A stretch of DNA of 33,192 nt from Octopus bimaculoides (taxonomy: Eukaryota): NCBI RefSeq assembly GCF_001194135.2, contig NC_068983.1:144705524-144738715 (forward strand), read 5' to 3'. A program made the position numbers and the translations under genes. Below are positions 406 through 33,125 of the stretch, in pieces; the first letter of the stretch is position 1, and each line of letters begins with the position of its first letter. The notes beneath the pieces were generated by a model. That model was not told the DNA's origin. It ran no database searches and worked only from the letters and a program-made list of their open reading frames with translations.

Positions 406-1635
406 TTAGGTCATCAAGTATGAAATTTGTAGAAAAGAAAAAAAGTTTGCCGATGTTTTATAAATACAAGGTATAGTTTTATTCATGAAAGTATGCACCC
501 CTATTGTCAATACACTTTTGCCATTTCAGCGGTAGCTTGTCCTCTCCGGAACTGTAAAAGCCTGGCAATCTAGAGTCAATAAAATCTTCGAAGGCCTGTT
601 TCACAGTATCGTCGGAATTAGATTTTTTTCCTATCAAAAAGTTATCTAAATTCTGGAAGTCAGTGGGGTCAAGATCAGGTGAGTATGGTGGATGATGGAG
701 AACTTCCAACTCCGACTCCGGTAGTTTCGCCAATGTCATTTTTCCGATGTGTGGTCTGGCGTTGTTTTGCAATAAAATAGGAGTGGATCTGTTGACCAAT
801 CTAGACAGTTTTTTTGTAAGTTTCTGCATCATTTGGTCCAATTGGCTGCAGTATACTTCTGGCCGTGATTGATGAGGCAGGTTTAATGAAATCACACCTG
901 CGCCCGACCACCAAATACACACCATCAGCTTCTTTTGTTGAATTTTGCTTTTTGGACTGTGTTTTGGTGATTCGTCTTTGTCGAACCATTGTGGTGAACG
1001 TTTACAGTTGTTGTATTGGATCCATTTCTCATTATATGTTATACTTTGATTCAAAAATGGTTCATTTTTGTGACGCGAATGTAGTATAAGGCAGACTTCC
1101 AAACGTTGCTGTTTCTGATTTTCATTGAGTTCATGTGAAACCCAGTTATCCAACTTTTTCACTTTACCGATTTGAACTAGGTGAGTCAATATTGTTTCTT
1201 TGCTAACACCATACAACAACAATAAATCACGGGCACTTTGAGATAGATTTGATTCAACGGTGGCTTTCAGTTCGTAATTATCCACTTTTGTTTCTGGTCG
1301 ACCGCGTTGCTCATCTGTGAGGTCAAAGTTACCAGAACGAAATTTTGCAAACCAATTTGATACTGTCTATTCCGAGCTGTCTGGGATGCTGTATTTCCAA
1401 GAAAGAACTCATATTTCAAAACTGCACGAATTTCCGACTTCTCCATCTCTTAACAAAAATAGTAAAAAAGATTTATAATTACTTTATAAAGCGAAAAACG
1501 AGATAGAATAAATAAATAGATGTGTCAGCTTTCTAACAATAAATAAAGATTATCAAAATATAATAATGGCGCAAAATGAGTAGCTGTCAAAGTTTACCAT
1601 ATACCTTACGACAAATTTCATACTTGACGACCTAA
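406..1635 (-). mobile_element. Tc1/mariner DNA transposon (Hsmar1/cecropia-like), near full length, decayed
   Basis: Terminal inverted repeats at 406-430 (TTAGGTCATCAAGTATGAAATTTGT) and 1611-1635 (reverse complement TTAGGTCGTCAAGTATGAAATTTGT) match at 24/25. TA flanks both ends (404-405, 1636-1637). The 1230 bp element encloses a transposase frame. Confidence 0.95.
479..1446 (-). pseudogene. mariner DD34D-type transposase pseudogene
   Basis: ATG at 1446 gives MEKSEIRAVLKYEF..ASQTARN. A frameshifting deletion near 1367 follows, then an open frame 1366-479 with WFAKFRSG, GRP, IGKVKKLDNWVSHEL (WVPHEL), TYNEKW (TxDEKW), LQNNARPH (HDNARPH), HPPYSPDLDPTD and WQKCIDNRGAYF. Two catalytic Asp positions read Asn. 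Confidence 0.92.
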
Positions 1636-3813: not shown

Positions 3814-5764
3814 AGTATAAGCCGAAGACGGCGTAGGTGAGACTATTAATTAAATTTGTGTTACTGAATATACATTTCCCAATACTAATTTACGTCATGT
3901 ATATGTATGCATACTACACACTACTGCGCTTACTGATCAGCTAACCTGAGAAACAGCTATAAATATGACCGAATGTTCCTCTTTGGTATTTGTGTATTAG
4001 ATTATGCATTCTCCTTACCTATCTATGAAGAATTGCTATGGAAGATTACATAGATTCTCCTCATTTTTATCTGTGATATTAGAGATGAACTTTCCGAATG
4101 TTACATATGTAGTTCATATGCTTTAACACCATCTGTACGTGTAAACTTCAAAAAAGCAATCTACTAAGTTTGATGCTGCATTTGAACGATGTTTTGATAT
4201 GATGCAATGTCTATTTTTTTTGTTTAGATAAATACGTGCAGAAAGGTATAGACAGAGTAGGGTTTGATATAATCTGTCTTTTGTGCTTAAAAATGGCAGT
4301 GAAATGGAACGAATGAATAATAAACAAGATGTTTGTTATTTAAGAATGTATTATGCAGTGAATTAATTTCTTTTACGTAGACTGAATCAAATTAATAGTG
4401 AATTTTGTTTTCCCGATGTTGTCAGACTTCTCTATTTTCCTTCTCTATCGCAAATACAAAGGTGTTCTTTCTTTGCATGACACGAATATTGCGATTCATA
4501 GTTTGAGTGAGGGTTCCAGAGTCGATTTGATTTTCCATTCACAGTTCCTCTTCCACTATCTTCTGTCCATCGTAATAACAGGACTTTAATGAAATGAATT
4601 TGATAATTGTTTTTTTATATCTTTTCTGGTCTAAAGTAGAATAACGCATACGGAAAAGTCGTGTGGTTGACATGACGTTTAGTGCTATCAGAGTGTACGC
4701 CGGCATGATTCACATATTTTAGAGGATTTCTGTTGTACGTTCACATGCTAAGTCAATGAAATTCACTATGTAGAGATATCATTAGTAGAATATCAATATA
4801 GAATGGACTAAGCACAATTAAGCATATAAATGAATGAATGAATGAATGAATAGATAAATAATAAATGAATAAATGGACTAACTGCATTCTGTATATCCTG
4901 TTTAACGTAGATATGCAGTAAGAATGCCAAAATACTGCGATATTTGTGTTGAGAAAACATCACGTATTGACATATAGTGTTATAAACCACAGAAGTATCG
5001 GCAGCAGATGAAAAGTTTCAGCAGTGGCGGTGGAGTTGTTAGATTCGGGATTTCTGCGTATTTGCGCGTCACCGGTAGCAAGTATCCACAGTCAAATTTC
5101 ATACTTAGACAAATACTCATATTTTTTTTTAGTTTCGCTATGAAACCAATCTTACGAAGCCTTAGTATGAGATTCCAATTAACATATTTCGTTCCTATTC
5201 TTCAATTTATCAGCTTTCGCTCACCACACTTTACAAACTGCAAATTATTAGCAGAAGGTTTCTTATTAAAATACAAATCAAATCTTAGACACAACTCATT
5301 CTAAGTGTAATGCATACTCGAAGATGGTAATAAATTACTAATGATACTCATGACGACAAAACTATTTTCCCACTCGTTAGCAAATTTCACTTTTGACTGA
5401 TTTTAATTAGTGTCAATACATCCATAATATCATTAGGTATTTTGTGTGTTCAACGAGGATACGTTATATTTCTAATGACTCTGACAACTAATAATTACTA
5501 TACGGCTATTAGCAGTAATAATGTCCGATGCAACGGCAATTATGCACTATGCTGTCATATCATGACAACGTGTGCGTGTTTATTTCGAAGAAAGTCTTGC
5601 GTGTATTGATACAATAAAGCAAAAAGCAACATGTTGTTCATATACATACTTATCACACATAAAACGCACACACAGAGATACACACATACACAGAGGTGTG
5701 TGTGCATTGACATTTATGCCTGTGTAAGTGCGAGTGTGCGTGTGTTGGTGTTTGCGTATAAAGG

Positions 5765-10679: not shown

Positions 10680-11500
10680 ATATTTAATCTGTTCCTTATA
10701 TCCTACATTATATAAAGCCGAGTTATAAAACTCAGCGTTACCATTGAAAACGGTTTCGTTGGTGAATAATATAGAAATTCTAAGTGATGTGTTTTAACTA
10801 AGATTTTGTTATATTTTTATGATGATTATTGAAGACACTGATGTATTTCAGCTTAGTAGAAGGTTTATGGTATGGGAAATACAAAGCTGTATTTAAGTTT
10901 AGAGTAAGAGCGAGGAAGTTAACCTTAGTTCTATCATCATCAAAGGAAATACTTAGGTCATATTACTAAAGAATTTGACTAAACCACGTCTAACTTTTTG
11001 TAGTTTTTGATTAGAGGAATTTTGTAGGTAAAATAGGCAATCATTACGATATAAGCCACCAAGTATATAGGAGAATTGTTCTTCAATTTCGGATAGAATA
11101 TAAATTCCGATCAAATCCGAAGCTTGAGCGGAGTCAGAACTTCCCATTGGAATATCGAAGCAATCAGGTCGATCTTTACGAATCCATAGTTTATTATCAA
11201 ATTGGATGATAGATGTTCTTGCCGCTAGGACAACGTTAATGTCGTCACCGGTTAGACCGGCCTTATTATGTGCGCACCATAGAGCGTTATTAAGGATGAT
11301 AGGATTGATAAAGGAATAATAGCTACAGATGTCGAACTGGATGAATTTAGTGTTTAGTTTATTTTCGATTGAGTTGAACCAGTCTACAATCTGGAAAGAG
11401 TTAGACCAAAGATGAAGTTTAATTATTTTCGTTAATGAGGGAATGTACTTATCCAGAATATTTTTTGTTAAGTATGCCGATATCCGATCTAGAAGGACAG
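10680..11500 (-). mobile_element. Penelope-like element reverse transcriptase remnant (PLE-1)
   Basis: The ORF track gives LWSNSFQIVDWF..KFIQFDICSYYSFI (motif A), FDIPMGSSDSAQASDLIG (motif B) and GGLYRND (YRDD decayed). After frameshifts the frame continues KVNFLALTL/NLNTALYFPYHKP and LRISILFTNETVFNGNAEFYNSALYNVGY (thumb and C-terminal region). It has stops and frameshifts. Confidence 0.85.
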
Positions 11501-12777
11501 ACATATGTGTGTGTGTGTTCGTATGTATATATGCATTGATCCCTTCTATACAGTATATATATATGCATGTATTCACACACACACATTGAGTCACGCATAC
11601 ATTTACGTATGAATAAAGTGGGAGAGAGACATGAGTGAGAGGGACTAGAAGAGAATTTGACAAATAAAATAAATTACTTTTACTAAAAGTACCAAATTTA
11701 TTGTATTAAAATCACCTGTCCAAATAGATTGCCAATTCTTTTTTGGTATTAATTGGCAAGCTTTAAGACATAGATCGTTTGGCAAATGGTGTAAACACAA
11801 GAAATGAAAATGATAAACAAATGAATAGATAAATAATCTAACAAGAAAGTGGACGTAATAAAAGTTGGACCGCTTTTGATCAATATAATAGATCTGGGAT
11901 TAAACATCGATAACACACACAACTGCACTTCTTAAGGGCACATTACAAAATCACCATCGAGGGAGGTGGTACGTGAACAGTCCAGGAATAAATATAGCAG
12001 CCAATCTTCCTTGAGAGGAGAGACACATTCAATATTAAAACTATAGACACATTTTGGCTGAAGGAAATGGTAACTCTCTTAGGTCAGCACCATTTGATAA
12101 TATTCCTGTAGAACTGTGCATAAAAAGCAGAATGGCTGATTGTTTCGTTGGGATTGGTCAGGTGATGAAGTCATCCCTGATAGCCCCGATGAAACCCCAA
12201 CAAGGGTAAAAAATCGATGAAGGTTGTTCATTATTTTGTAAAACCTCGGATTAATAGTTAAATTCGACATGGTTGTATGTTAACTAGGTGAGTTTACCTA
12301 CCTACCTAGCTACCTACCTATCTACCTACCTACCTACATACATACATACATACATACATATATACATACATACGCACACACACACACACACATAAATATA
12401 TATATATATATATATACATACACATACATATATACATGCAAAAATACCTTGTTGATGTTGAAAATTCAACGAAAAAGCCTTGGATCTAGGTTAGGAACCA
12501 TCCCTTTCTCTATTGGCGAGACATTTTGATATAAAACTGAATAATGGCATACATACATATACATACATATTTACACACACACACACACATATATATATGT
12601 ATGTATGTATGTATGTATGCATATATATGCATGTATGTATGTATGTATGTATATGCATGTATGTATGTATGTATGTATATATATGCACGTATGTATGTAT
12701 GTATGTATGCATATATGTATGTATATATGCATGTATGTTTGCAGTCGTGTATGCTTGTCAAAAGCAGGGCTCATTAG

Positions 12778-16970: not shown

Positions 16971-17620
16971 CTTTCTATAGGTAATTTTGATAACAAATTG
17001 GTACTGAAGATTTAAAATCTCATGATGCTTTAAAAAACATAAACTAAAATCTTTTATTGAACAAGAATTATATCTGTTACCCTTTCAATGCTAGAGGTTT
17101 TGTTATTCAAAATATGCTTAAATAAATTCAAGATTAGTAAATAAATCATTTGAAGCTCACTCTGCTAAACAATACTCTAAAGCAATACTTCTCAAATAGT
17201 GCGCTGCAAGGCGTATCCAGGTTCACTGCAGATTTTCAAAAGTATAATTTAAGTCTTTAAAAAAATCCATACTCATGTTTGAACGTTTTAGAAAACGTGT
17301 TATTCATAATTTTGTTATACGCAAGTATGATTAATAGCATAAGATTAGCAATAGTTTCTCTCTATTTCTTTTTTTTACACTTTTAGCTTTAAAATACATT
17401 TATTAAACTTTTTCATGTAAATTCCGACAGCAGTTTTTAAGTTTACATACAAAGTGTACCAGTTTGCTCTCTAATCCGACACGAAATCATAAAGCTTGAG
17501 ATCCACTGCTCTAATGATGCAGCTCCTTTGTTTAAATAGTTTACGATTTACTTTTCGGAGATAAACTTGCTCATGACTCATGATTGATTGGATATATTCA
17601 CATATAATTTTCTATTGCAG

Positions 17621-17719
17621 AAAGCCATTTTCAGTGCAGTAACGGCCTCTATATTCACAAAGACAAAGTTTGCGACTTCCACAGAGATTGTTTAATAGAC
17701 CACGATGATGAAACTAACT
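17621..17719 (+). CDS. GRL101: internal coding exon, atypical LDL-receptor class A module of a GRL101-like LDLa-LRR GPCR
   Basis: Acceptor TTTTCTATTGCAG| and donor |GTAAGT at 17720; 99 bp, phase 1/1. Translation xSHFQCSNGLYIHKDKVCDFHRDCLIDHDDETN(C) keeps the FxC, CD, DC and DE LDLa motifs, with Cys3 replaced by Tyr. The exon call is strong. The gene name rests on a remembered Lymnaea GRL101 Cys pattern. Confidence 0.85.
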
Positions 17720-18769
17720 GTAAGTATTCGAAATTCCTTATGTGTGTTCCATTCATATCAGTATTTTAATTAACCATTATAATATTTCTTAGATACTATT
17801 GTTGTCATATTTTTATTGAAAATATTTACAAAAGAAGATTTGATACTGATTATCTGTTTCAGTCAAATATATGCTCATCAATACATTGATTTTAACTGTC
17901 AAATTGTTCGGACATTAATCAATAGTGAAACAGTGGTACCACAGACGTGTTTTGTATGAGAACGAATAAAATATATGCCTGTAGCTATTGTGTATTCCTG
18001 GGCAACCGTGATCATAGAAACTGGCATAACAATTCTGTCGTATGTTTCCAGATAATGTATATCTAGCCCCAGACAAATATGTTGTTCAATTTTTTTCAAT
18101 TCAATTCGGAGTAATTTCAAGCAGATTCGGTTAAATTCATTACAAGCTAAGCACTGCATAGAGGCTCTCCTTTATGTGTTACTTTAATGTAGATAAGACT
18201 CACAAAGGCTTCTTGCAAAGTATTAATCAAATATGTCTTAGTACAGAGATCGTCTTCCTGAGAGCTATTTTCTTGTGTACACGTCTTTTACTCTTCTGAT
18301 TCTGATAAATTACATATTACACACAGTATGATTTTCCAGATTGAAAAACACTTTTTCTAGCATCACTAGAGAATCTACTTTCGGTACGTAGCCAGACCTG
18401 ATCATCCCTAATCGAATAACGTAATTAATTTAATAAAGAAACACTATTTTGTCATTTTATGTTAATGAAATACAGATCACATTAAAGTAATTAATTTGAC
18501 TAATTACTGTCGTTATTGGAACAACTGAATCTAATAGAAAATTTGGAAACACTTTTGAACTTAAGCAATTAGTACTGTAAATAAATTTGACCATGTTTGT
18601 TACAGTACAATAACAGTATATCGTAAAAGTGTATCATTGTAGTTTAGTATAGAGTCAATGTATCAATAAGTGAAGTGGTTGACTACGTTCAAATGTACAA
18701 ATTAAGCACATTTGTTTCAACTATATATTACAATAAAAAATAAAGAATTGAAAGCAATATATATATGTA

Positions 18770-18935
18770 TATATGTATGTATGTATGTATGCATGTATGC
18801 ATGTATGTATGTATGTATATATGCCTGTATGTATGTATGTATATATGTATGTGTGTGTATGTATGTATGTATGTATGTATGCATGCATGTATGCATGTAT
18901 GTATGTTTGTATGTATGTATGTATGCATGTATGTA
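18770..18935. repeat. (TATG)n / (ATAC)n microsatellite
   Basis: Directly visible. It abuts the 3' end of the RLE LINE remnant. Confidence 0.9.
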
Positions 18936-18939
18936 TGAA

Positions 18940-19476
18940 TATGTGCAGATTTTTATGTTTTGGTTATGTATGTATTCTCATGCATATAGTTGCATATCTA
19001 GACATGCTCATATATATCTAAATGACAAACTTCTGGAANNNNNNNNNNNNNNNNNNNNNNNNNNNNNNNNNNNNNNNNNNNNNNNNNNNNNNNNNNNNNN
19101 NNNNNNNNNNNNNNNNNNNNNNNNNNNNNNNNNNNNNNNNNNNNNNNNNNNNNNNNNNNNNNNNNNNNNNNNNNNNNNNNNNNNNNNNNNNNNNNNNNNN
19201 NNNNNNNNNNNNNNNNNNNNNNNCCTTTTCACTGATCTTCAGCTTTATGCCAACATCCGCTAGGCAGCTCATTTTCTATATACAGTTGCTCTTCTTCATC
19301 GCAGATCATTATATTAGGTCTGATGGGTTTTACATTTTATTAAGGTCTTCACTGGAAAATTCCACCAGTATTCCTTCTTATTGTGAGTGACTATGGCTTC
19401 TACCATACTGTAGGTTCTTTGTTCTTTGTTCTCGGGGTTATGCTTCCGATGGATTTCATTATAGAGTGTAAATAGG
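18940..19476 (-). mobile_element. non-LTR retrotransposon 3' remnant with restriction-like endonuclease (R2/R4/NeSL-type)
   Basis: The minus strand across frameshifts reads EYWWNFPVKTLIKCK / RPNIMICD / MSCLADVGIKLKISEK, matching the RLE pattern RPD..E.SCPAD...K..EK. A weak IKIC motif lies near 18945. The element is interrupted by a 185-N gap (19039-19223). Support is strongest for 19224-19476. Confidence 0.75.
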
Positions 19477-19495
19477 TATGTATATATGTATATAC

Positions 19496-19496
<1 letters not shown>

Positions 19497-19554
<58 letters not shown>
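19497..19554. repeat. (TATC)n microsatellite
   Basis: Directly visible. Confidence 0.95.
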
Positions 19555-20316
19555 CATATATAGGCACGTGACCAACTGATTAGGTTGCTGCACTCTCGAT
19601 CACAAGATCTTGTTTTTGTGCAAAACATTTCCTTCCAACTGTTATTGAGTAACCCTGTGGTGGACAGGCGTCGCGCTCAGGGGGAAGTCTGATGTCGGCT
19701 ACTGATACACCATCGAAAACCAAGTCCTTGGACTCGAAACAGTAATGTGAAAATGACTTACTACTGGTTGTCCTCTTTTTGCTTCACAAATTCAGCAGGA
19801 GTTTTTCGAACAGCACTGAGCAAACAGTAAACGGATAACGCCCTCCTTGCACTCTTACCATGTTCACCGTCCAAACTGGAGAGACTTGGAAAACACGTGC
19901 TGGTCGTCTTCGTTAATTTTATCCTCTGTTTCTTTTGAGGTATGCTATAAGAAAGCCAACTTTCTTTGAGATATCTTGTTGGTCTTGGATTCTGACTACA
20001 AACTCAGATTAAATTTATATTGTTGTATTTTCTTTATGTATCAGAATTATGCACTTACACATTTGGTAGTCTCTATTTTAATTTAATAGCTATTGAGCAA
20101 TATAAGACTTTTGATTTCACGCTTTTATGCCAAATATATAACTCATAAAGTTTGATTCAGTCGATTGTGCATATACGTGCAAGTCGGTCACATGTAGATT
20201 TACTGCAGTGCAATAATGTATTAGAGTTTTCTGTCCTGTAATTATTTGAGGTCTAAATTGCTTTGAAATCATTCTCTGATGTTTATCCTTCAAACTGTAT
20301 TGATATAGATAGATAG

Positions 20317-20386
<70 letters not shown>

Positions 20387-20821
20387 TGTGTGTGTGTTTG
20401 TGTGTGTGTGTGCGTGCGTATGTATATAAATATACATGCATACATACATACATATGCGCATGCCCGTGCTTGTGTGTCTGTAGTAACTGTAATAAACAAA
20501 AGCCAAAAAGAAATAGCAATTATTCTGAAACTAAATTAAACCCGAATTTTTTAAACAATTACAGTGATAACGATAGTATCAATACACAACAAAGCATTCC
20601 AATTGCAGTATTATTTTGAATAACAGATCGCTAATTTGATTGATTCCAGACGAATCAGTTGCGTTCACATTGCTATGTACAGTGGATATTAGGAATCGGA
20701 TTCTCTATTCCCATCATTTCCGATTTTAGAGAAATTATGCCGAGAATATATGTTATCATGTCAATAAATTTTATAATTTCGTCGCAGTTTCACCACGTGT
20801 GTACATGCATATATGCAATGT

Positions 20822-20884
<63 letters not shown>

Positions 20885-20885
<1 letters not shown>

Positions 20886-21130
20886 CCAATCTAACGTGGC
20901 AGCCAAAGAAATAGGACAGACACTGCAGTTGATTAGCTCTGGAGACGATCGCATCTAGCTAGTTTTATGACGCACAAATCTGCGTCTATAAACCTTCTAA
21001 CAGGGGAGATCATCCACTCCCCCTTGCTGGCTTGGCATCCACAGACCGGTTTCGGGGTCATTGCCCCTTATCATTGTGGAGTCGGCGAGACCACCAAAGG
21101 TTACTGTTGACCTCTGTCCGTAGGTTTTAT
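20885..21130 (+). repeat. copy 1 of a local ~310 bp interspersed repeat (left-truncated)
   Basis: Collinear with 21243-21490 (AAATCTGCGTC, TTGCTGGCTTGGCATCCACAGACC, CCCTTATCA.TGTGGAG, CTGTTGACCTCTGT). Confidence 0.85.
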
Positions 21131-21178
21131 TTATATATATTCAGTGAAACACATTCACCAATTTTCAAAAATAGAAAT

Positions 21179-21490
21179 GTTATAATTTCTAAATCTCTCT
21201 AAAGGAGAGTTACAGCAGCAGTACTGGGTATTGATATTTATTGCCAAACTAACTTGGCAGTCCAGAGAAATAGGACGAATGCTGCTGTTGGTTATCTCCG
21301 TGAGGCGATCGTCTCTAGGTAACTATATGATGCATAAATCTGCGTCCATAAACCTTCGAACAGGGGAGGTCATCAATTTGTCCTTGCTGGCTTGGCATCC
21401 ACAGACCATGTTCGGGGTAGTTGTCCCTTATCAATGTGGAGCAGACGAGTCCAGGAGGGGTCGCTGTTGACCTCTGTTCGAAGATTTTAT
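21179..21490 (+). repeat. copy 2 of the ~310 bp repeat (longest copy)
   Basis: Matches copy 1 directly and copy 3 in inverted orientation. It ends at a (TA)n array (21498-21548). Confidence 0.9.
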
Positions 21491-21496
21491 GTGTAA

Positions 21497-21549
<53 letters not shown>

Positions 21550-21553
<4 letters not shown>

Positions 21554-21775
21554 TGTGGATGTCAAGCCAGCAAGAGGTTGATGACCTCCCTTGTTCGAAG
21601 GTTTATGGACGCAGATTTGTGCCTCATGTAGCTAGCTAGAGGCGATAACCTCTCGGAACTAATCAACAGCAGCATTCGTCTTATTTCTTTGGACTGCCAT
21701 GTTGGTTTGGCAATAAATATTAATACCCAGTACTGCTTCTGTATCTCTCCTTTAGAGAGATTTAGAAACCATAAC
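21550..21775 (-). repeat. copy 3 of the repeat, inverted
   Basis: The reverse complement aligns to 21179-21407 with about 30 differences in ~229 columns (manual count, ~87%). Confidence 0.9.
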
Positions 21776-21838
21776 ACGCACGCGCACGCGCGCGCACACA
21801 CGCACACACACACATGCGCGCAGACACACGCGTGTGTT

Positions 21839-21842
<4 letters not shown>

Positions 21843-21905
<63 letters not shown>

Positions 21906-21909
21906 GTGC
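21843..21909. repeat. (TG)n microsatellite
   Basis: Directly visible. Confidence 0.95.
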
Positions 21910-23870
21910 ATGTACATTAGCGAACTTCAGAAATTACAATTATTACAGGTAGAGAAAAATATAGATGTTACTGTGCATAAGAAAGCTAATGTATAGGTAA
22001 TAAATCTACTAGGCTCTAAATCTCCTAATAAATAAACATCGGTTCTATTATTATCTCCATGTGTTGTATATGGATTTGTTTCTTCACTTAAGATTGTTAA
22101 GGTGTATATATGAGTTCACAAACACACACGCACGCGCGCGTGTGACCCCTCTCCCTCCCCCACACACATACAGAGATTGAGAGAGAGATTGAGTAAAGTA
22201 TGATAGATAGAATGGTAGAGAGATGCTTGCGTACGCGCGCCCATGTCTATGTGTGTATATGTGTTTATTTGTATTGGTGCTTAGGCTCGCGTGTATAAGT
22301 ATGCGTGCGTGGACATGTTTATATATTTGTTTGAGTATAAACTAATTGATAGGTGAACAATTTCAATATATAAAATCTGAAATGGGTATTTGAGAATATA
22401 GCATATCTTATATGCGGCAGTATTAGAAGTATTAAGATTTCGTGTAGAATATAATAGATTTCAGGTACGTGTGTCTTGAGTCACATAAACATAATTGCTG
22501 CCTTGTGTACATATGGCATTCTTTCATAAATAATCTTTTTGTTTAGATATAGATATATTTATATATATATATATTTTAAAATTACTTTCCCATTGCATAT
22601 GAGGAAGAAAAATGTGTGCATCTCGAGAAGAAAATATACGATATTAATGACAGTTTATTATGGTACACTGAAATCTGATAGAGAAATTCATCTCCTAGCT
22701 TGTGGTTAATTTGTAGTTGCTTGGCATAAATAACATGGTAACTTGCTGAAGTTAAATTTGTTTTGGTTCTCTATCCATTATGGATGAAGCCATGCTCTCA
22801 ACTCATAACAGCCTAAAACACGAGAATTAGAATTTTAGCGCAGCCGTGCAATGACCTAATGGAGTGTGTATATGTGTCACAAGATATTTTCTTAGTATAC
22901 TCTCTGCTTTTGCAGAGGGTAATTCGCATAAACATGCAAATGTCAGTAATGACTGAATATTGACTGCAGCGGTTGCCTGCATCTTCAGACCTTCGTGAGG
23001 ATAGTTTAAATAATATTCAACAAAGAAGGGTCGACTTCATGTAAAGTATAAACACTGATTCCCTGATTACTTGAAGGCAAACAAAATTGGAAAGTTTGTT
23101 ATGTAATATTTAGCTACAAAGTTTTATATATGTTTCGTTAACATTGAGTAGATCTCAATTCTATAGGGAAAACCTTATTATAAGTCGATTACATTGTCAG
23201 ATCTTCAGAGATTGCGTAACTTTCATTAGTAATCTTTAGTATTCATGTTGGACTATCGAAAGTGTTGTTCTATCAACTACTGTATCGACTATATATACCT
23301 ACATACATATACACATATATAAATTTCACACACACTTTTGTGATGAAATATTAACTATTCTCAAATAATTATCACTGTCATATAATAAGTGTTTTCTTCA
23401 CTTTATGGGAAGGAAGTATAGAGTGGAATTTAAAAATAGATAATGTATTAGATATTCTGAACACAGCCAGTTTGTAAGCATAACAGCTGTGAACAGTTGC
23501 AGACGAAAATTACTATCTGAACCGATGATTGAGCAAAAGCACAATTAAAATGTAAAACAACAGAAAGAAAAAAAATATCGAAATGTATTTTGTAGAAAGT
23601 GTATGTATACAATGTATGTGCGCGCGCGTGTGATAGTTCAGTATCCATATAAACTTTCAAACTTTGGTTTCAGAGACGCAATATTTGTATAGTGTTAAAA
23701 TGTAACACTATACAATATGTTATATTATATACTGCATAATATTGTACATATTATTGTTTTATGCGCGCACAAACACATACACAAACACACACACACGTTC
23801 TCTCTTATACACACACACATACATACACACAAACGCTAACTTTTGTATAATGAGTTGATTTTCTATGCAG

Positions 23871-23987
23871 GTGGAAAGTGTCCAGAAAGGAAATACCAAT
23901 GCCAGAGTGGCGAATGTATAGATATATCAAACCAGTGTGATGGAATATGTGATTGTGCCCATACATGCGATGACGAAAACAACTGTG
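23871..23987 (+). CDS. GRL101: internal coding exon, 8-cysteine LDLa module of a GRL101-like GPCR
   Basis: Acceptor TTTTCTATGCAG| and donor |GTAAG at 23988; 117 bp, phase 1/1. Translation (C)GKCPERKYQCQSGECIDISNQCDGICDCAHTCDDENNC is in frame with the exon at 17621-17719. Confidence 0.92.
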
Positions 23988-25256
23988 GTAAGAAAACATA
24001 TATATACGTCACTTGTTTTATTTTGTTTATATCTTCATATCAGTATGAAATAATATTACAAACATTACTTCAAATGACTGCAGGCATTGTGCTATCAACA
24101 GCGGCAACCTCACTTTTCGCATCAACGTTAGTAGTAAAATGTAGGGACTAACAATAAAAGCAAAATGTGTTATGGAAATCAATCAGTTCTGATTTATCTA
24201 CAGACATTTCTATGTAATGCTTCTTTAATATTGCCGTTATTTAACCTAGAATCGTCTTAGGTTGACGTGACAGTCTTCTTTCAGGCATATTATACTCTGC
24301 ACTTTGTAGTAAACTGTGAATATTTTTAAAAATGAGAAATGGCTTACTTGGGTGGAAATTTGGTTACTTCTCTGAGCGTAACGAGCAATCATATCAGTTG
24401 CCACTTTCGTTTACTGAAGCTAAGTACAGCCTTTAGAAAGTTTTCCTGAAAATCTGCTCGCATATACAATGATGGACATAATATATTTTGTGTTTGCCAG
24501 CGTTGTTCTTTCTGTTAGGTAAATGTGGTAGAAATGATTACCTTAGGTACTTTTTATGTATATTTGCATTCTTTTCTGCATTCTGTGTTGTTTGTTACTG
24601 GCAGCATTTTTGTCTCCTGTGTTTACGAGTATGCGAGTTTGTGCGTGTGGTTTGTTATGTTGTTGATTGGGAGAGTTAGTTGAAACTATTTACTAGTTTT
24701 ACAGGATTTATTTATATGGGGAAGGTGTATTCGTACGAAAGTTCAAGAGAGTGGGAGGAGGATGTATTTGATTTATTCAAGTGTATATGTGTAGAATAAA
24801 ATGTTGTGTAATAGGGTCGTATATGTGTAAGATAAACAAATTTGGTGGAAGCATGAATTCTCGAAGTACTCCATACAAAGAATTCCTACCATATTGGAAG
24901 TGTTTTTTTCTACTGCAGTACATAGGTTTAGTAACCTGACAGTTAGTTTGATAGTTAGTGTTTTGTGTTGATTTTAAAGTCGGCGCTGACTGATTTATAT
25001 ATGAGTGGATAACAGAAGAAATGGAAAGACTTCACTAATATTTATGAGAAGAATGTTACGTGATTAAGACTTTTGCTCTTGTAACATTTCTCTATTTTCT
25101 GTGTTAGAATCGCGAATAGTTAGGTCAATGGTTGAGTGTACTGTGATGAACCCATGTAATGACTTGGAGAGTGTATAAGGAGTCTATAAGGTGCATGATT
25201 TTATTTCACTCGAGTTTTTGTTGGACTTCAGAATTGTTTCAGTATTATCCAGCTTC

Positions 25257-31932: not shown

Positions 31933-32262
31933 TTATTGTTTATTTAGTTTGGTTTGGAATTTATTAATAAAGTTCTTTTCTCTGATTTTTCTTTCAATTT
32001 CACTTGGACAGTGTAGTTTGTAGAATGGAAATATTATAAATATTTTCCGACCGCATGTTGCTCGATGGTTATTCAAAGGTATCTGACGGACATTTGGGTC
32101 TCTAATTTGCTGCCGGTACACACGTGAACGTTCTGATAGTGCATTTCCAGTCTGACCTACATATAATTCTTCACAATTTGGGCATTTGATGCAGTAACTT
32201 AAATTTCTGCTTTTGCAGTTCATATTTGTATTTGTGAATATTTTTCTGGGTTTTGTGTTCAT
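31933..32262 (-). pseudogene. PLE GIY-YIG endonuclease domain
   Basis: NCKSRNLSYCIKCPNCEELYVGQTG..LSER..EKNFINKFQTKLN. The CxxC between the GIY and YIG halves is typical of PLE endonucleases. Confidence 0.88.
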
Positions 32263-33125
32263 ATATTGGCCGGTATGTATGAATTGGCATGTGCCACATC
32301 GGCCATCATTGCATTTAGATTCAGTAAACGATTGGTGTTTGTTGCTAAGGTTAAACTTTGCTTTGTTAATAATTTTCTCAAGTTTTTAAGCTGTCTTTTA
32401 CTAAGAACAATAGCTCGATCTGTGATTATATCTTTTAATTCATTACTTTTAGCAATGATTGGTAAGTTTTCTTCGGCAATGTTGACGATATTCTGATGAC
32501 ATGGGTTGTGTGTCACTATAAAGGGTACGACTTGTTCCTGTTTTCTTCTTTGCGTTGTTCTTAGCTGTTGCATGGGTATGTGTATGGCCTGCTCTATGCC
32601 ATTTTCTATAAGTAGACACGGGTATTTTTATTTGAGAGCAAAAACTCTCTTAGTTCTGCTAGGCGTTTGTTCGTGATATTTGCATCTTCTACAATGGTAC
32701 AAATTCTTCTGTCTAGGCATTATGGGATGTTGCGTTTGTATGTGGAGGATGGGACGGCTTAAAATTCAGGTATTCATGTATGTCCGTGTGTTTGTAGTAT
32801 ATACCTGTGGTAACGGTGGTGTGCTTTTTAATTACCATTATATCTAGGGATCGTAATTTGTTATTACTCATATCCTTTGTAAATTGGAGAGATAGGTGTA
32901 GGTTGATCAGGAGGATATTGGACTCTTCCAGAGTATTTAGAGATTGTGTCCAGATTATGAAACAATCGTCAAGGTATCTCTTCTATGACTTCTAAACCCA
33001 ATGCTATAGTTTTCCTCTACTTCTTGGTAGAGTTGTTCTTCTAGAAATCCCATTACAGAGTACGCGTAAATGGGAGCAAACAACGTTCCCATCGCCGTGC
33101 CTTTAATTTGGGTGTAATTCTTTAT
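31933..33125 (-). mobile_element. Penelope-like element (PLE-2, Neptune-like): RT C-terminal half plus GIY-YIG endonuclease, frameshifted and 5'-truncated at (TA)n
   Basis: The minus strand reads YTQIKGTAMGTLFAPIYA (motif B), RYLDDCFIIW (~32950-32978), DIMV..IYYKHTDIHEYLNFKPSHP, VPFIVTHNP..SKRQLKNLRKLL, KCNDGRCGTC and then the endonuclease. Confidence 0.92.

What the first reader, a model, noticed from the sequence alone, without database searches (positions are those of the whole stretch)
17621..23987. Hidden spliced gene: a 4-Cys LDLa followed by an 8-Cys LDLa module (GRL101 signature)
Seen: two exons missed as a unit by the ORF track join via a split TGT codon to give xSHFQCSNGLYIHKDKVCDFHRDCLIDHDDETNC-GKCPERKYQCQSGECIDISNQCDGICDCAHTCDDENNC. 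Known: canonical LDLa has 6 Cys (1-3, 2-5, 4-6). Module 1 has lost Cys3, and apparently Cys1, which would remove one whole disulfide. Module 2 has two extra Cys around the acidic Ca2+-binding segment while keeping CD, DC and DE. From memory, Lymnaea GRL101 has the same pair (FQC..VCDGWVDC..DELNC then CDGYCDCKTCDDEEVC). Inference: an orphan LDLa-LRR GPCR with a conserved, to my knowledge structurally uncharacterised, fourth-disulfide LDLa variant.
Basis: partly seen in the sequence, partly recalled or inferred. Interest (0 to 1): 0.7.

Follow-up and report, generated by a model that had tools for sequence, protein, structure and literature searches.

The report
Two exons of octopus GRL101 receptor
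The two exons are real and encode the fifth and sixth cysteine-rich modules of an octopus's copy of GRL101, a known orphan hormone-type receptor. Their odd 4-cysteine plus 8-cysteine pattern is a fixed hallmark of this receptor across animals, and no structure of it has been solved.

Summary
Exon A (17621-17719) and exon B (23871-23987) lie on the + strand, have canonical AG/GT sites and are both phase 1-1.

The assembly gap (19039-19223) is inside the intron and touches neither exon. Orthologous proteins run straight from module 5 into module 6, so no coding exon is missing.

The peptide is 71/72 identical to residues 181-252 of Octopus sinensis 'G-protein coupled receptor GRL101'. That protein is 1122 aa, with 12 LDLa modules, LRRs and a rhodopsin-type 7TM domain. 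The window is therefore a slice of the GRL101 gene of a closely related octopus. The O. sinensis gene spans about 804 kb, which explains why 33 kb holds only two exons.

The 4-Cys + 8-Cys pair sits at modules 5-6 in about 30 bilaterian GRL101 orthologues, apart from one faulty Lymnaea gene model. It is absent from paralogous LGRs, from LRP-type proteins and from every PDB sequence.

The extra fourth disulfide is supported only indirectly. The two extra Cys always occur together, in three independent contexts, and insertions are tolerated between them. It was not measured.

The gene and family are already known. The Cys signature appears undescribed and is of modest interest.

The parts
17621..17719 (+). 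Exon encoding LDLa module 5 of GRL101 (the 4-Cys module). Phase 1-1, 99 nt, peptide (E)SHFQCSNGLYIHKDKVCDFHRDCLIDHDDETN + first base of a Cys codon.
   Evidence: Sequence and splice sites. Pfam Ldl_recept_a 28.8 bits, matching profile positions 7-37 only. 100% identical to O. sinensis GRL101 residues 180-213.
17720..23870 (+). Intron between the two exons, about 6.15 kb as assembled. It is GT...AG and full of microsatellites and copies of an interspersed repeat.
   Evidence: Donor GTAAGT and acceptor ...tgcAG. Tandem repeats. Repeat copies. No coding similarity to GRL101 inside it.
19039..19223 (.). Assembly gap of 185 N inside the intron. It is non-coding as far as orthologues show.
   Evidence: Orthologue residues 213|214 are contiguous across the junction.
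23871..23987 (+). Exon encoding LDLa module 6 of GRL101 (the 8-Cys module). Phase 1-1, 117 nt, peptide (C)GKCPERKYQCQSGECIDISNQCDGICDCAHTCDDENNC + first base of a Gly codon.
   Evidence: Sequence and splice sites. Pfam Ldl_recept_a 24.3 bits. 38/39 identical to O. sinensis GRL101 residues 214-252.

Best explanation
**What it is.** The two exons are consecutive coding exons of the GRL101 orthologue of an octopus. GRL101 is a type C2 leucine-rich-repeat GPCR. The species differs from O. sinensis and O. vulgaris by one residue in 72. O. bimaculoides is the obvious candidate, but that is inference.

**The full receptor, seen in the 99%-identical O. sinensis protein.** It has a signal peptide, 12 LDLa modules, an LRR block and a rhodopsin-type 7TM domain. 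The window encodes modules 5 and 6.

**The two modules.**
- Module 5 has no Cys1-Cys3 disulfide. It starts immediately after the last Cys of module 4.
- Module 6 follows after a 2-residue linker. It keeps the six canonical Cys and adds two more: one at C4+4, and one 3-4 residues after C5.
- Both modules keep the acidic residues that cage Ca2+ in LDLa modules.

**Inferred.**
- Module 5 folds with two disulfides (C2-C5 and C4-C6).
- Module 6 folds with four, the extra one stapling the Ca2+-binding loop (C'-D-C5-x2-3-C'').
- Together with the missing or short linkers, this would make modules 4-6 a stiff unit in the middle of the 12-module chain.

**By analogy only.** As in relaxin-type receptors, a still unknown ligand would bind the ectodomain and the 7TM domain would signal through G proteins.
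For: **Exons and identity.**
- Exons, phases and splice sites.
- LDLa domain matches.
- Identity of 34/34 and 38/39 to contiguous residues of O. sinensis GRL101.
- Domain content of that protein (Ldl_recept_a 239 bits, LRR_8 198.6, 7tm_1 108.3).
- Its Cys counts per module are 6,6,6,6,4,8,6,6,6,6,6,6.
- The O. sinensis gene spans about 803.5 kb, so two exons per 33 kb is expected.

**Conservation of the pair.**
- All 12 Cys are invariant in 13 sequences from six or more phyla. In a 32-sequence alignment 11 are invariant and the first Cys of module 6 is at least 90% conserved.
- The pair is present in about 30 full-length GRL101 orthologues: molluscs, annelid, nemerteans, hemimetabolous insects, crustaceans, tardigrade, mite, echinoderms and hemichordates.
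- About 24 Cys precede the pair in most of them, so it sits at modules 5-6.

**Support for C'-C'' pairing.**
- Of 2949 LDLa C-terminal halves, 55 have both extra Cys and none has C' alone.
- The same two positions are also both Cys in module 2 of echinoderm GRL101 and in one module of a perlecan-like protein, without a 4-Cys neighbour.
- Insects tolerate insertions of roughly 5-25 aa between C5 and C''.
- The AF2 model has mean pLDDT 88.3 with two LDLa-like lobes. It matches tandem LDLa structures.
Against: - No transcript evidence from this species was available.
- The LRR and 7TM parts are not in the window. They are seen only in the orthologue.
The fourth disulfide is therefore inferred.
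- About four LDLa modules elsewhere have a Cys at the C'' position without C'.
- The 55 co-occurrences are mostly one inherited event, not independent trials.
- Non-Cys residues of modules 5-6 are no better conserved than those of other modules (0.35 and 0.39 against 0.30-0.52). Nothing marks them as the ligand or activation site.
Confidence: 0.93

Rival explanations
1. The exons belong to another LDLa-repeat protein, such as LRP2/megalin, LDLR/VLDLR-type, corin, perlecan or sortilin-related receptor, and not to an LGR.
For: A single-sequence search ranks giant multi-LDLa proteins first because many modules add up. One perlecan-like protein has a lone 8-Cys module.
Against: - Identity to those proteins is only about 40%.
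- None of them has the 4+8 pair. Their profile scores are 55 bits or less, against 55-100 for pair-bearing proteins.
- The window peptide is 71/72 identical to Octopus GRL101.
Confidence: 0.01
2. The window holds a partial duplicate or pseudogene fragment of GRL101, not the functional gene.
For: Only two exons are present in 33 kb. The region is rich in transposon remnants and gaps. No expression data are available.
Against: - Both reading frames are intact and all four splice sites are canonical.
- There is one conservative difference in 72 residues from a sister species.
- The sparse exon density matches the roughly 804-kb orthologous gene.
Confidence: 0.04
3. The two extra Cys of module 6 do not form an intramodule fourth disulfide. 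They might bond to another module or another protein, bind a metal, or remain free.
For: - No structure or S-S distance is available.
- The neighbouring module has lost two Cys, which invites a cross-module scheme.
- A few unrelated modules carry C'' alone.
Against: - Module 5's four Cys are the homologues of C2, C4, C5 and C6, which pair among themselves in all solved LDLa modules. This rests on established knowledge.
- The same extra pair occurs next to ordinary 6-Cys modules in echinoderm module 2 and in a perlecan-like protein.
- C' never occurs without C''.
Confidence: 0.2

Closest known systems
GRL101 of Lymnaea stagnalis and its bilaterian orthologues (type C2 LGR; arthropod 'LGR5' of Veenstra)
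   Same: - Same architecture in the 99%-identical octopus protein: 12 LDLa modules, LRRs and a 7TM domain.
- Same 4-Cys + 8-Cys pair at modules 5-6.
- Still an orphan receptor (PMC11863921). An IGF-like ligand has been proposed (PMC8286064).
   Different: Nothing essential: this is the octopus orthologue. The window holds only 2 of its exons. The original Lymnaea protein sequence could not be retrieved for a direct comparison.
Relaxin-family receptors RXFP1/RXFP2 and insect LGR3/LGR4 (type C1 LGR)
   Same: An LDLa module or modules N-terminal to LRRs and a rhodopsin-type 7TM domain. They are the closest 7TM relatives (PMC8286064, PMC11863921).
   Different: They carry one canonical 6-Cys LDLa module (rarely two). 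No 4+8 pair was found in the relaxin-receptor-like proteins sampled. The RXFP2 LDLa in the PDB scores only 24.9 bits against the pair profile.
Canonical LDL-receptor class A module (PF00057; LDLR, VLDLR, LRP2)
   Same: Same fold is predicted. Same acidic Ca2+-cage residues and the same 1-1 phase single-module exons.
   Different: The canonical module has six Cys (1-3, 2-5, 4-6). Module 5 has four, lacking 1 and 3. Module 6 has eight. No PDB sequence has either variant as a pair.

Membership tests
GRL101 / type C2 LGR | Orthology to named GRL101 proteins | tested here: met
   The window peptide is 71/72 identical to O. sinensis and O. vulgaris GRL101 over contiguous residues.
GRL101 / type C2 LGR | An array of many (about 12) LDLa modules at the N-terminus | tested here: inconclusive
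   The window holds only 2 modules. The 12-module array is seen in the near-identical orthologue, not in this window.
GRL101 / type C2 LGR | Leucine-rich-repeat block followed by a rhodopsin-type 7TM domain | not testable with these tools
   These exons lie outside the 33-kb window; the orthologous gene spans about 804 kb. They are present in the O. sinensis protein: LRR_8 198.6 bits, 7tm_1 108.3 bits.
GRL101 / type C2 LGR | 4-Cys + 8-Cys LDLa pair at modules 5-6 (a signature proposed here) | tested here: met
   All 12 Cys are present in the window peptide. A profile of the pair separates GRL101 orthologues (55-100 bits) from all other LDLa proteins sampled.
LDL-receptor class A module (PF00057) | Score above the Pfam gathering threshold | tested here: met
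   28.8 and 24.3 bits against a cut-off of 24.1. Module 2 only just passes.
LDL-receptor class A module (PF00057) | Six Cys forming the 1-3, 2-5 and 4-6 disulfides | tested here: not met
   Module 5 has 4 Cys (no C1 or C3). Module 6 has 8. They are variants of the module, not canonical members.
LDL-receptor class A module (PF00057) | Acidic Ca2+-cage residues (D after C4, D before C5, D-E before C6) | tested here: met
   Module 5 has CD...DC...DDE and module 6 has CD..CDC...CDDE. D29 (with E30 at 90% or more), D60, D67 and E68 are invariant across orthologues. Ca2+ binding itself was not tested.

The most novel reading that the evidence does not exclude
Module 6 represents a distinct LDLa subtype that is at least as old as the bilaterians. 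It would carry a fourth disulfide stapling the Ca2+-binding loop, paired with a two-disulfide module fused to its neighbour. This rigid 4-5-6 unit would be a functional determinant (ligand docking or activation) of the orphan receptor GRL101. No solved structure and no paper I could search describes it.
Probability: 0.35. Interest if true: 0.45.

Novelty: already known. Interest (0 to 1): 0.3.

Why it matters
**The gene.** It is ordinary: an orthologue of a receptor cloned in 1994 and annotated in sister octopus species.

**Two practical points.**
- The O. bimaculoides RefSeq GRL101 model (590 aa) and a Lymnaea genome model both lack these LDLa exons. The pair profile could be used to repair such models.
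- The invariant 4+8 Cys pattern gives a cheap sequence marker that separates true GRL101 orthologues from the many 'GRL101-like' paralogues.

**A structural lead.** The pattern also points to an LDLa variant with no solved structure, in a receptor whose ligand is still unknown.

Tried and rejected
- **Word-indexed homologue search.** The 72-aa peptide found nothing. The 13-sequence pair profile returned only short fragments. The index does not suit short Cys-rich queries.
- **Pfam on raw frame translations.** I prepared filtered ORF chunks, then used tblastn with orthologues instead.
- **Representative search.** It ranked giant LDLa proteins first. The orthologues had to be pulled out by motif.
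- **O. sinensis genomic DNA, to fill the gap.** Isoform X2 is not on record. The isoform X1 gene is too long for DNA to be returned.
- **Species identification.** An exact look-up of a transposon ORF found nothing.
- **Tensen et al. 1994 (PMC43879).**
- **RNA genes.** The Rfam and tRNA scans of the window were empty.
- **Disulfide geometry.** Structure prediction gave a confident model but no coordinates were accessible, so the geometry could not be measured.
- **Are modules 5-6 the best-conserved part of the LDLa array?** Tested and rejected.
Full report
**1. Observation.**
On the + strand, 17621-17719 (99 nt) follows a pyrimidine-rich tract ending in AG and is followed by GTAAGT. The second exon, 23871-23987 (117 nt), follows ...tatgcAG and is followed by GTAAGA.

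Both exons start and end in phase 1, and the split codon T|GT encodes Cys.

Pfam recognises each half as an LDL-receptor class A module: 28.8 and 24.3 bits against a cut-off of 24.1, and E=3e-10 for the pair. The first half matches only profile positions 7-37, so it has no Cys1 region.

A six-frame scan for Cys-rich reading frames found no other LDLa-like exon in the 33 kb. All other Cys-rich ORFs are microsatellite translations.

**2. The gap.**
The window has five N runs. The one flagged, 19039-19223, lies in the intron. It is 1.3 kb past the donor of exon A and 4.6 kb before the acceptor of exon B, and it abuts a (TATG)n array.

It cannot affect the reading frame, because the frame is set by splice phase. 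The real risk would be a hidden exon or a wrong scaffold join.

The orthologous proteins argue against a hidden exon. O. sinensis GRL101 residues 180-213 map to 17620-17721 (34/34 identical). The very next residues, 214-252, map to 23873-23989 (38/39 identical). The bivalve protein P0007 shows the same contiguity.

The intron's true length and the scaffold join itself remain unverified.

**3. Identity.**
A word-indexed search with the 72-aa peptide found nothing. An exhaustive HMMER search of 1.84 billion representatives returned mostly giant multi-LDLa proteins at about 40% identity.

A motif scan of those hits found the same pair in proteins of about 1100-1150 aa. The pair is HFxCxxGxY...C-D-x-W-x-D-C...DExxC followed by C...C...C...CDGxCDCxxxCDDExxC. 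The sources name these proteins 'G-protein coupled receptor GRL101-like', from a crinoid, a tardigrade, a mite and a barnacle. Unnamed models come from a bivalve, an annelid and gastropods.

A profile of three full-length members retrieved named GRL101 proteins from many phyla. Among them are Octopus sinensis GRL101 isoform X2 (1122 aa) and Argonauta hians GRL101-like.

The O. sinensis sequence contains ...ECESHFQCSNGLYIHKDKVCDFHRDCLIDHDDETNCGKCPERKYQCQSGECIDISNQCDGICDCAHTCDDENKCG.... That is 71/72 identical to the window peptide, the one change being N to K. O. vulgaris has the same K.

The window therefore comes from a closely related but different octopus. O. bimaculoides is the natural candidate (inference). 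Its RefSeq GRL101 model is only 590 aa and starts inside LDLa module 12, so these exons are unannotated there.

The O. sinensis protein has Ldl_recept_a (239 bits), LRR_8 (198.6) and 7tm_1 (108.3). Its gene spans about 803.5 kb, which explains why the window holds only two exons.

**4. Anatomy of the pair.**
Splitting the O. sinensis ectodomain by its cysteines gives 12 modules with 6,6,6,6,4,8,6,6,6,6,6,6 Cys, followed by the LRR N-cap. The window encodes modules 5 and 6.

- **Module 5** begins directly after the last Cys of module 4 (...SDETEC-ESHFQC...). It has no Cys1, and a Leu/Tyr stands where Cys3 would be (GLYI in place of GxCI). It therefore retains the homologues of C2, C4, C5 and C6.
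- **Module 6** follows after a 2-residue linker (NC-GK-C). It has the six canonical Cys plus C' at C4+4 and C'' three or four residues after C5 (CDG-I-C'-D-C5-AHT-C''-DDE).
- Both modules keep the acidic residues that coordinate Ca2+ in solved LDLa modules: D after C4, D before C5, and D-E before C6. This comparison rests on established knowledge of LDLR module 5.

**5. Conservation and specificity.**
In an alignment of 13 pair regions from six or more phyla, all 12 Cys are invariant. In a 32-sequence alignment, 11 are invariant and the first Cys of module 6 is at least 90% conserved.

An HMM of the pair was scored against the 275 proteins gathered:

| Group | Score for the best stretch (bits) |
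|---|---|
| Pair-bearing proteins | 55-100 |
| Ordinary adjacent LDLa modules | 55 or less |
| Paralogous LGRs: Mercenaria expansions, Littorina relaxin-receptor-like, other 'GRL101-like' proteins with LDLa+LRR+7TM | below 40, or no match |
| PDB chains | 38 or less |

Every named protein with the pair is GRL101 or GRL101-like. About 24 Cys precede the pair in most full-length orthologues, so its position at modules 5-6 is conserved.

The one exception among full-length hits is a partial Lymnaea genome model. It has the 4-Cys module, but unrelated sequence stands where module 6 should be, probably a missed exon.

**6. Is there a fourth disulfide?**
The evidence is indirect:

- Among 2949 LDLa C-terminal halves in the collected proteins, 55 have both extra Cys and none has C' alone. 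About four unrelated modules have a Cys at C'' alone. Most of the 55 are one inherited event, so this is not a statistical proof.
- The same two positions are both Cys in two further contexts that lack a 4-Cys neighbour: module 2 of echinoderm GRL101 (Antedon, Acanthaster, Patiria) and one module of a perlecan-like protein.
- Hemipteran and odonate orthologues carry insertions of roughly 5-25 residues between C5 and C'' while keeping both Cys. A disulfide-closed loop would tolerate that.
- An AlphaFold2 model built with the 32-sequence alignment is confident (mean pLDDT 88.3). It shows two lobes with the short hairpins of LDLa modules and matches tandem LDLa structures.

I rate the intramodule C'-C'' bond at roughly 0.65-0.8.

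**7. Function.**
GRL101 is the founding type C2 LGR. It is still called an orphan receptor (PMC11863921), and an IGF-like ligand has been proposed on comparative grounds (PMC8286064).

The ectodomain-binds, 7TM-signals scheme is taken from relaxin-type relatives and was not tested here.

Non-Cys residues of modules 5-6 are no better conserved than those of other modules: 0.35 and 0.39 mean pairwise identity, against a range of 0.30-0.52. Modules 2-3 are the best conserved.

The evidence therefore supports a structural role, a stiff and Ca2+-dependent 4-5-6 segment, more than a special ligand site.

**8. Literature.**
None of the papers found for GRL101 and LDLa, cysteine or LDL receptor class A mentions the 4+8 pattern. 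The original 1994 paper was not available. 'Not described' is therefore limited to what could be searched.

**9. Verdict.**

The gene is a known one, annotated in sister species. The interest lies only in the conserved Cys signature, which has no solved structure, and in its use for fixing gene models and defining true GRL101 orthologues.

Noticed in passing
window 479-1285 (-): A 268-aa ORF that is a mariner-type transposase remnant (Pfam Transposase_1, 65.6 bits).
   Followed up: partly
window 31936-32385 (-), with an adjacent ORF at 32259-32573 (-): An ORF with a GIY-YIG nuclease domain (25.3 bits, cut-off 22.6). It may be the endonuclease end of a Penelope-like retroelement. The neighbouring ORF is unassigned.
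   Followed up: partly
window 10956-11705 (-): A 250-aa stop-free frame with no Pfam match. Its origin is unknown, possibly a decayed mobile-element gene.
   Followed up: partly
window 20942-21776 (inside the intron): Several copies of an interspersed repeat of about 200 nt. 20942-21140 and 21302-21500 are direct copies (79%). 21178-21376 and 21578-21776 are inverted copies (89%). There is no tRNA or Rfam match.
   Followed up: partly
P0276 (O. bimaculoides XP_052822766.1) and P0189 (Lymnaea stagnalis partial model): Public GRL101 gene models are incomplete. The O. bimaculoides model is 590 aa and starts in LDLa module 12. The Lymnaea model has unrelated residues where the 8-Cys module should be.
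   Followed up: partly
P0023 residues ~72-109, P0063 and P0111 residues ~68-106, P0001 residues ~4912-4945: The same two extra Cys positions also occur in module 2 of echinoderm GRL101 and in one LDLa module of a perlecan-like protein. In both cases the neighbouring modules are ordinary 6-Cys modules.
   Followed up: yes
P0180, P0184, P0030, P0053 (hemipteran and odonate GRL101): Insertions of roughly 5-25 residues lie between Cys5 and the extra Cys'' of module 6, and both extra Cys are retained.
   Followed up: no
P0164 residues 417-460 (module 11 of GRL101): A second conserved deviant module. 'SHL' replaces the 'SDE' acidic motif in octopus, and the 3-phylum consensus reads GCxDxSHLLEC. It probably does not bind Ca2+.
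   Followed up: no
O. sinensis GRL101 gene: The orthologous gene spans about 803.5 kb for a 1123-aa product, so its introns are very large.
   Followed up: no
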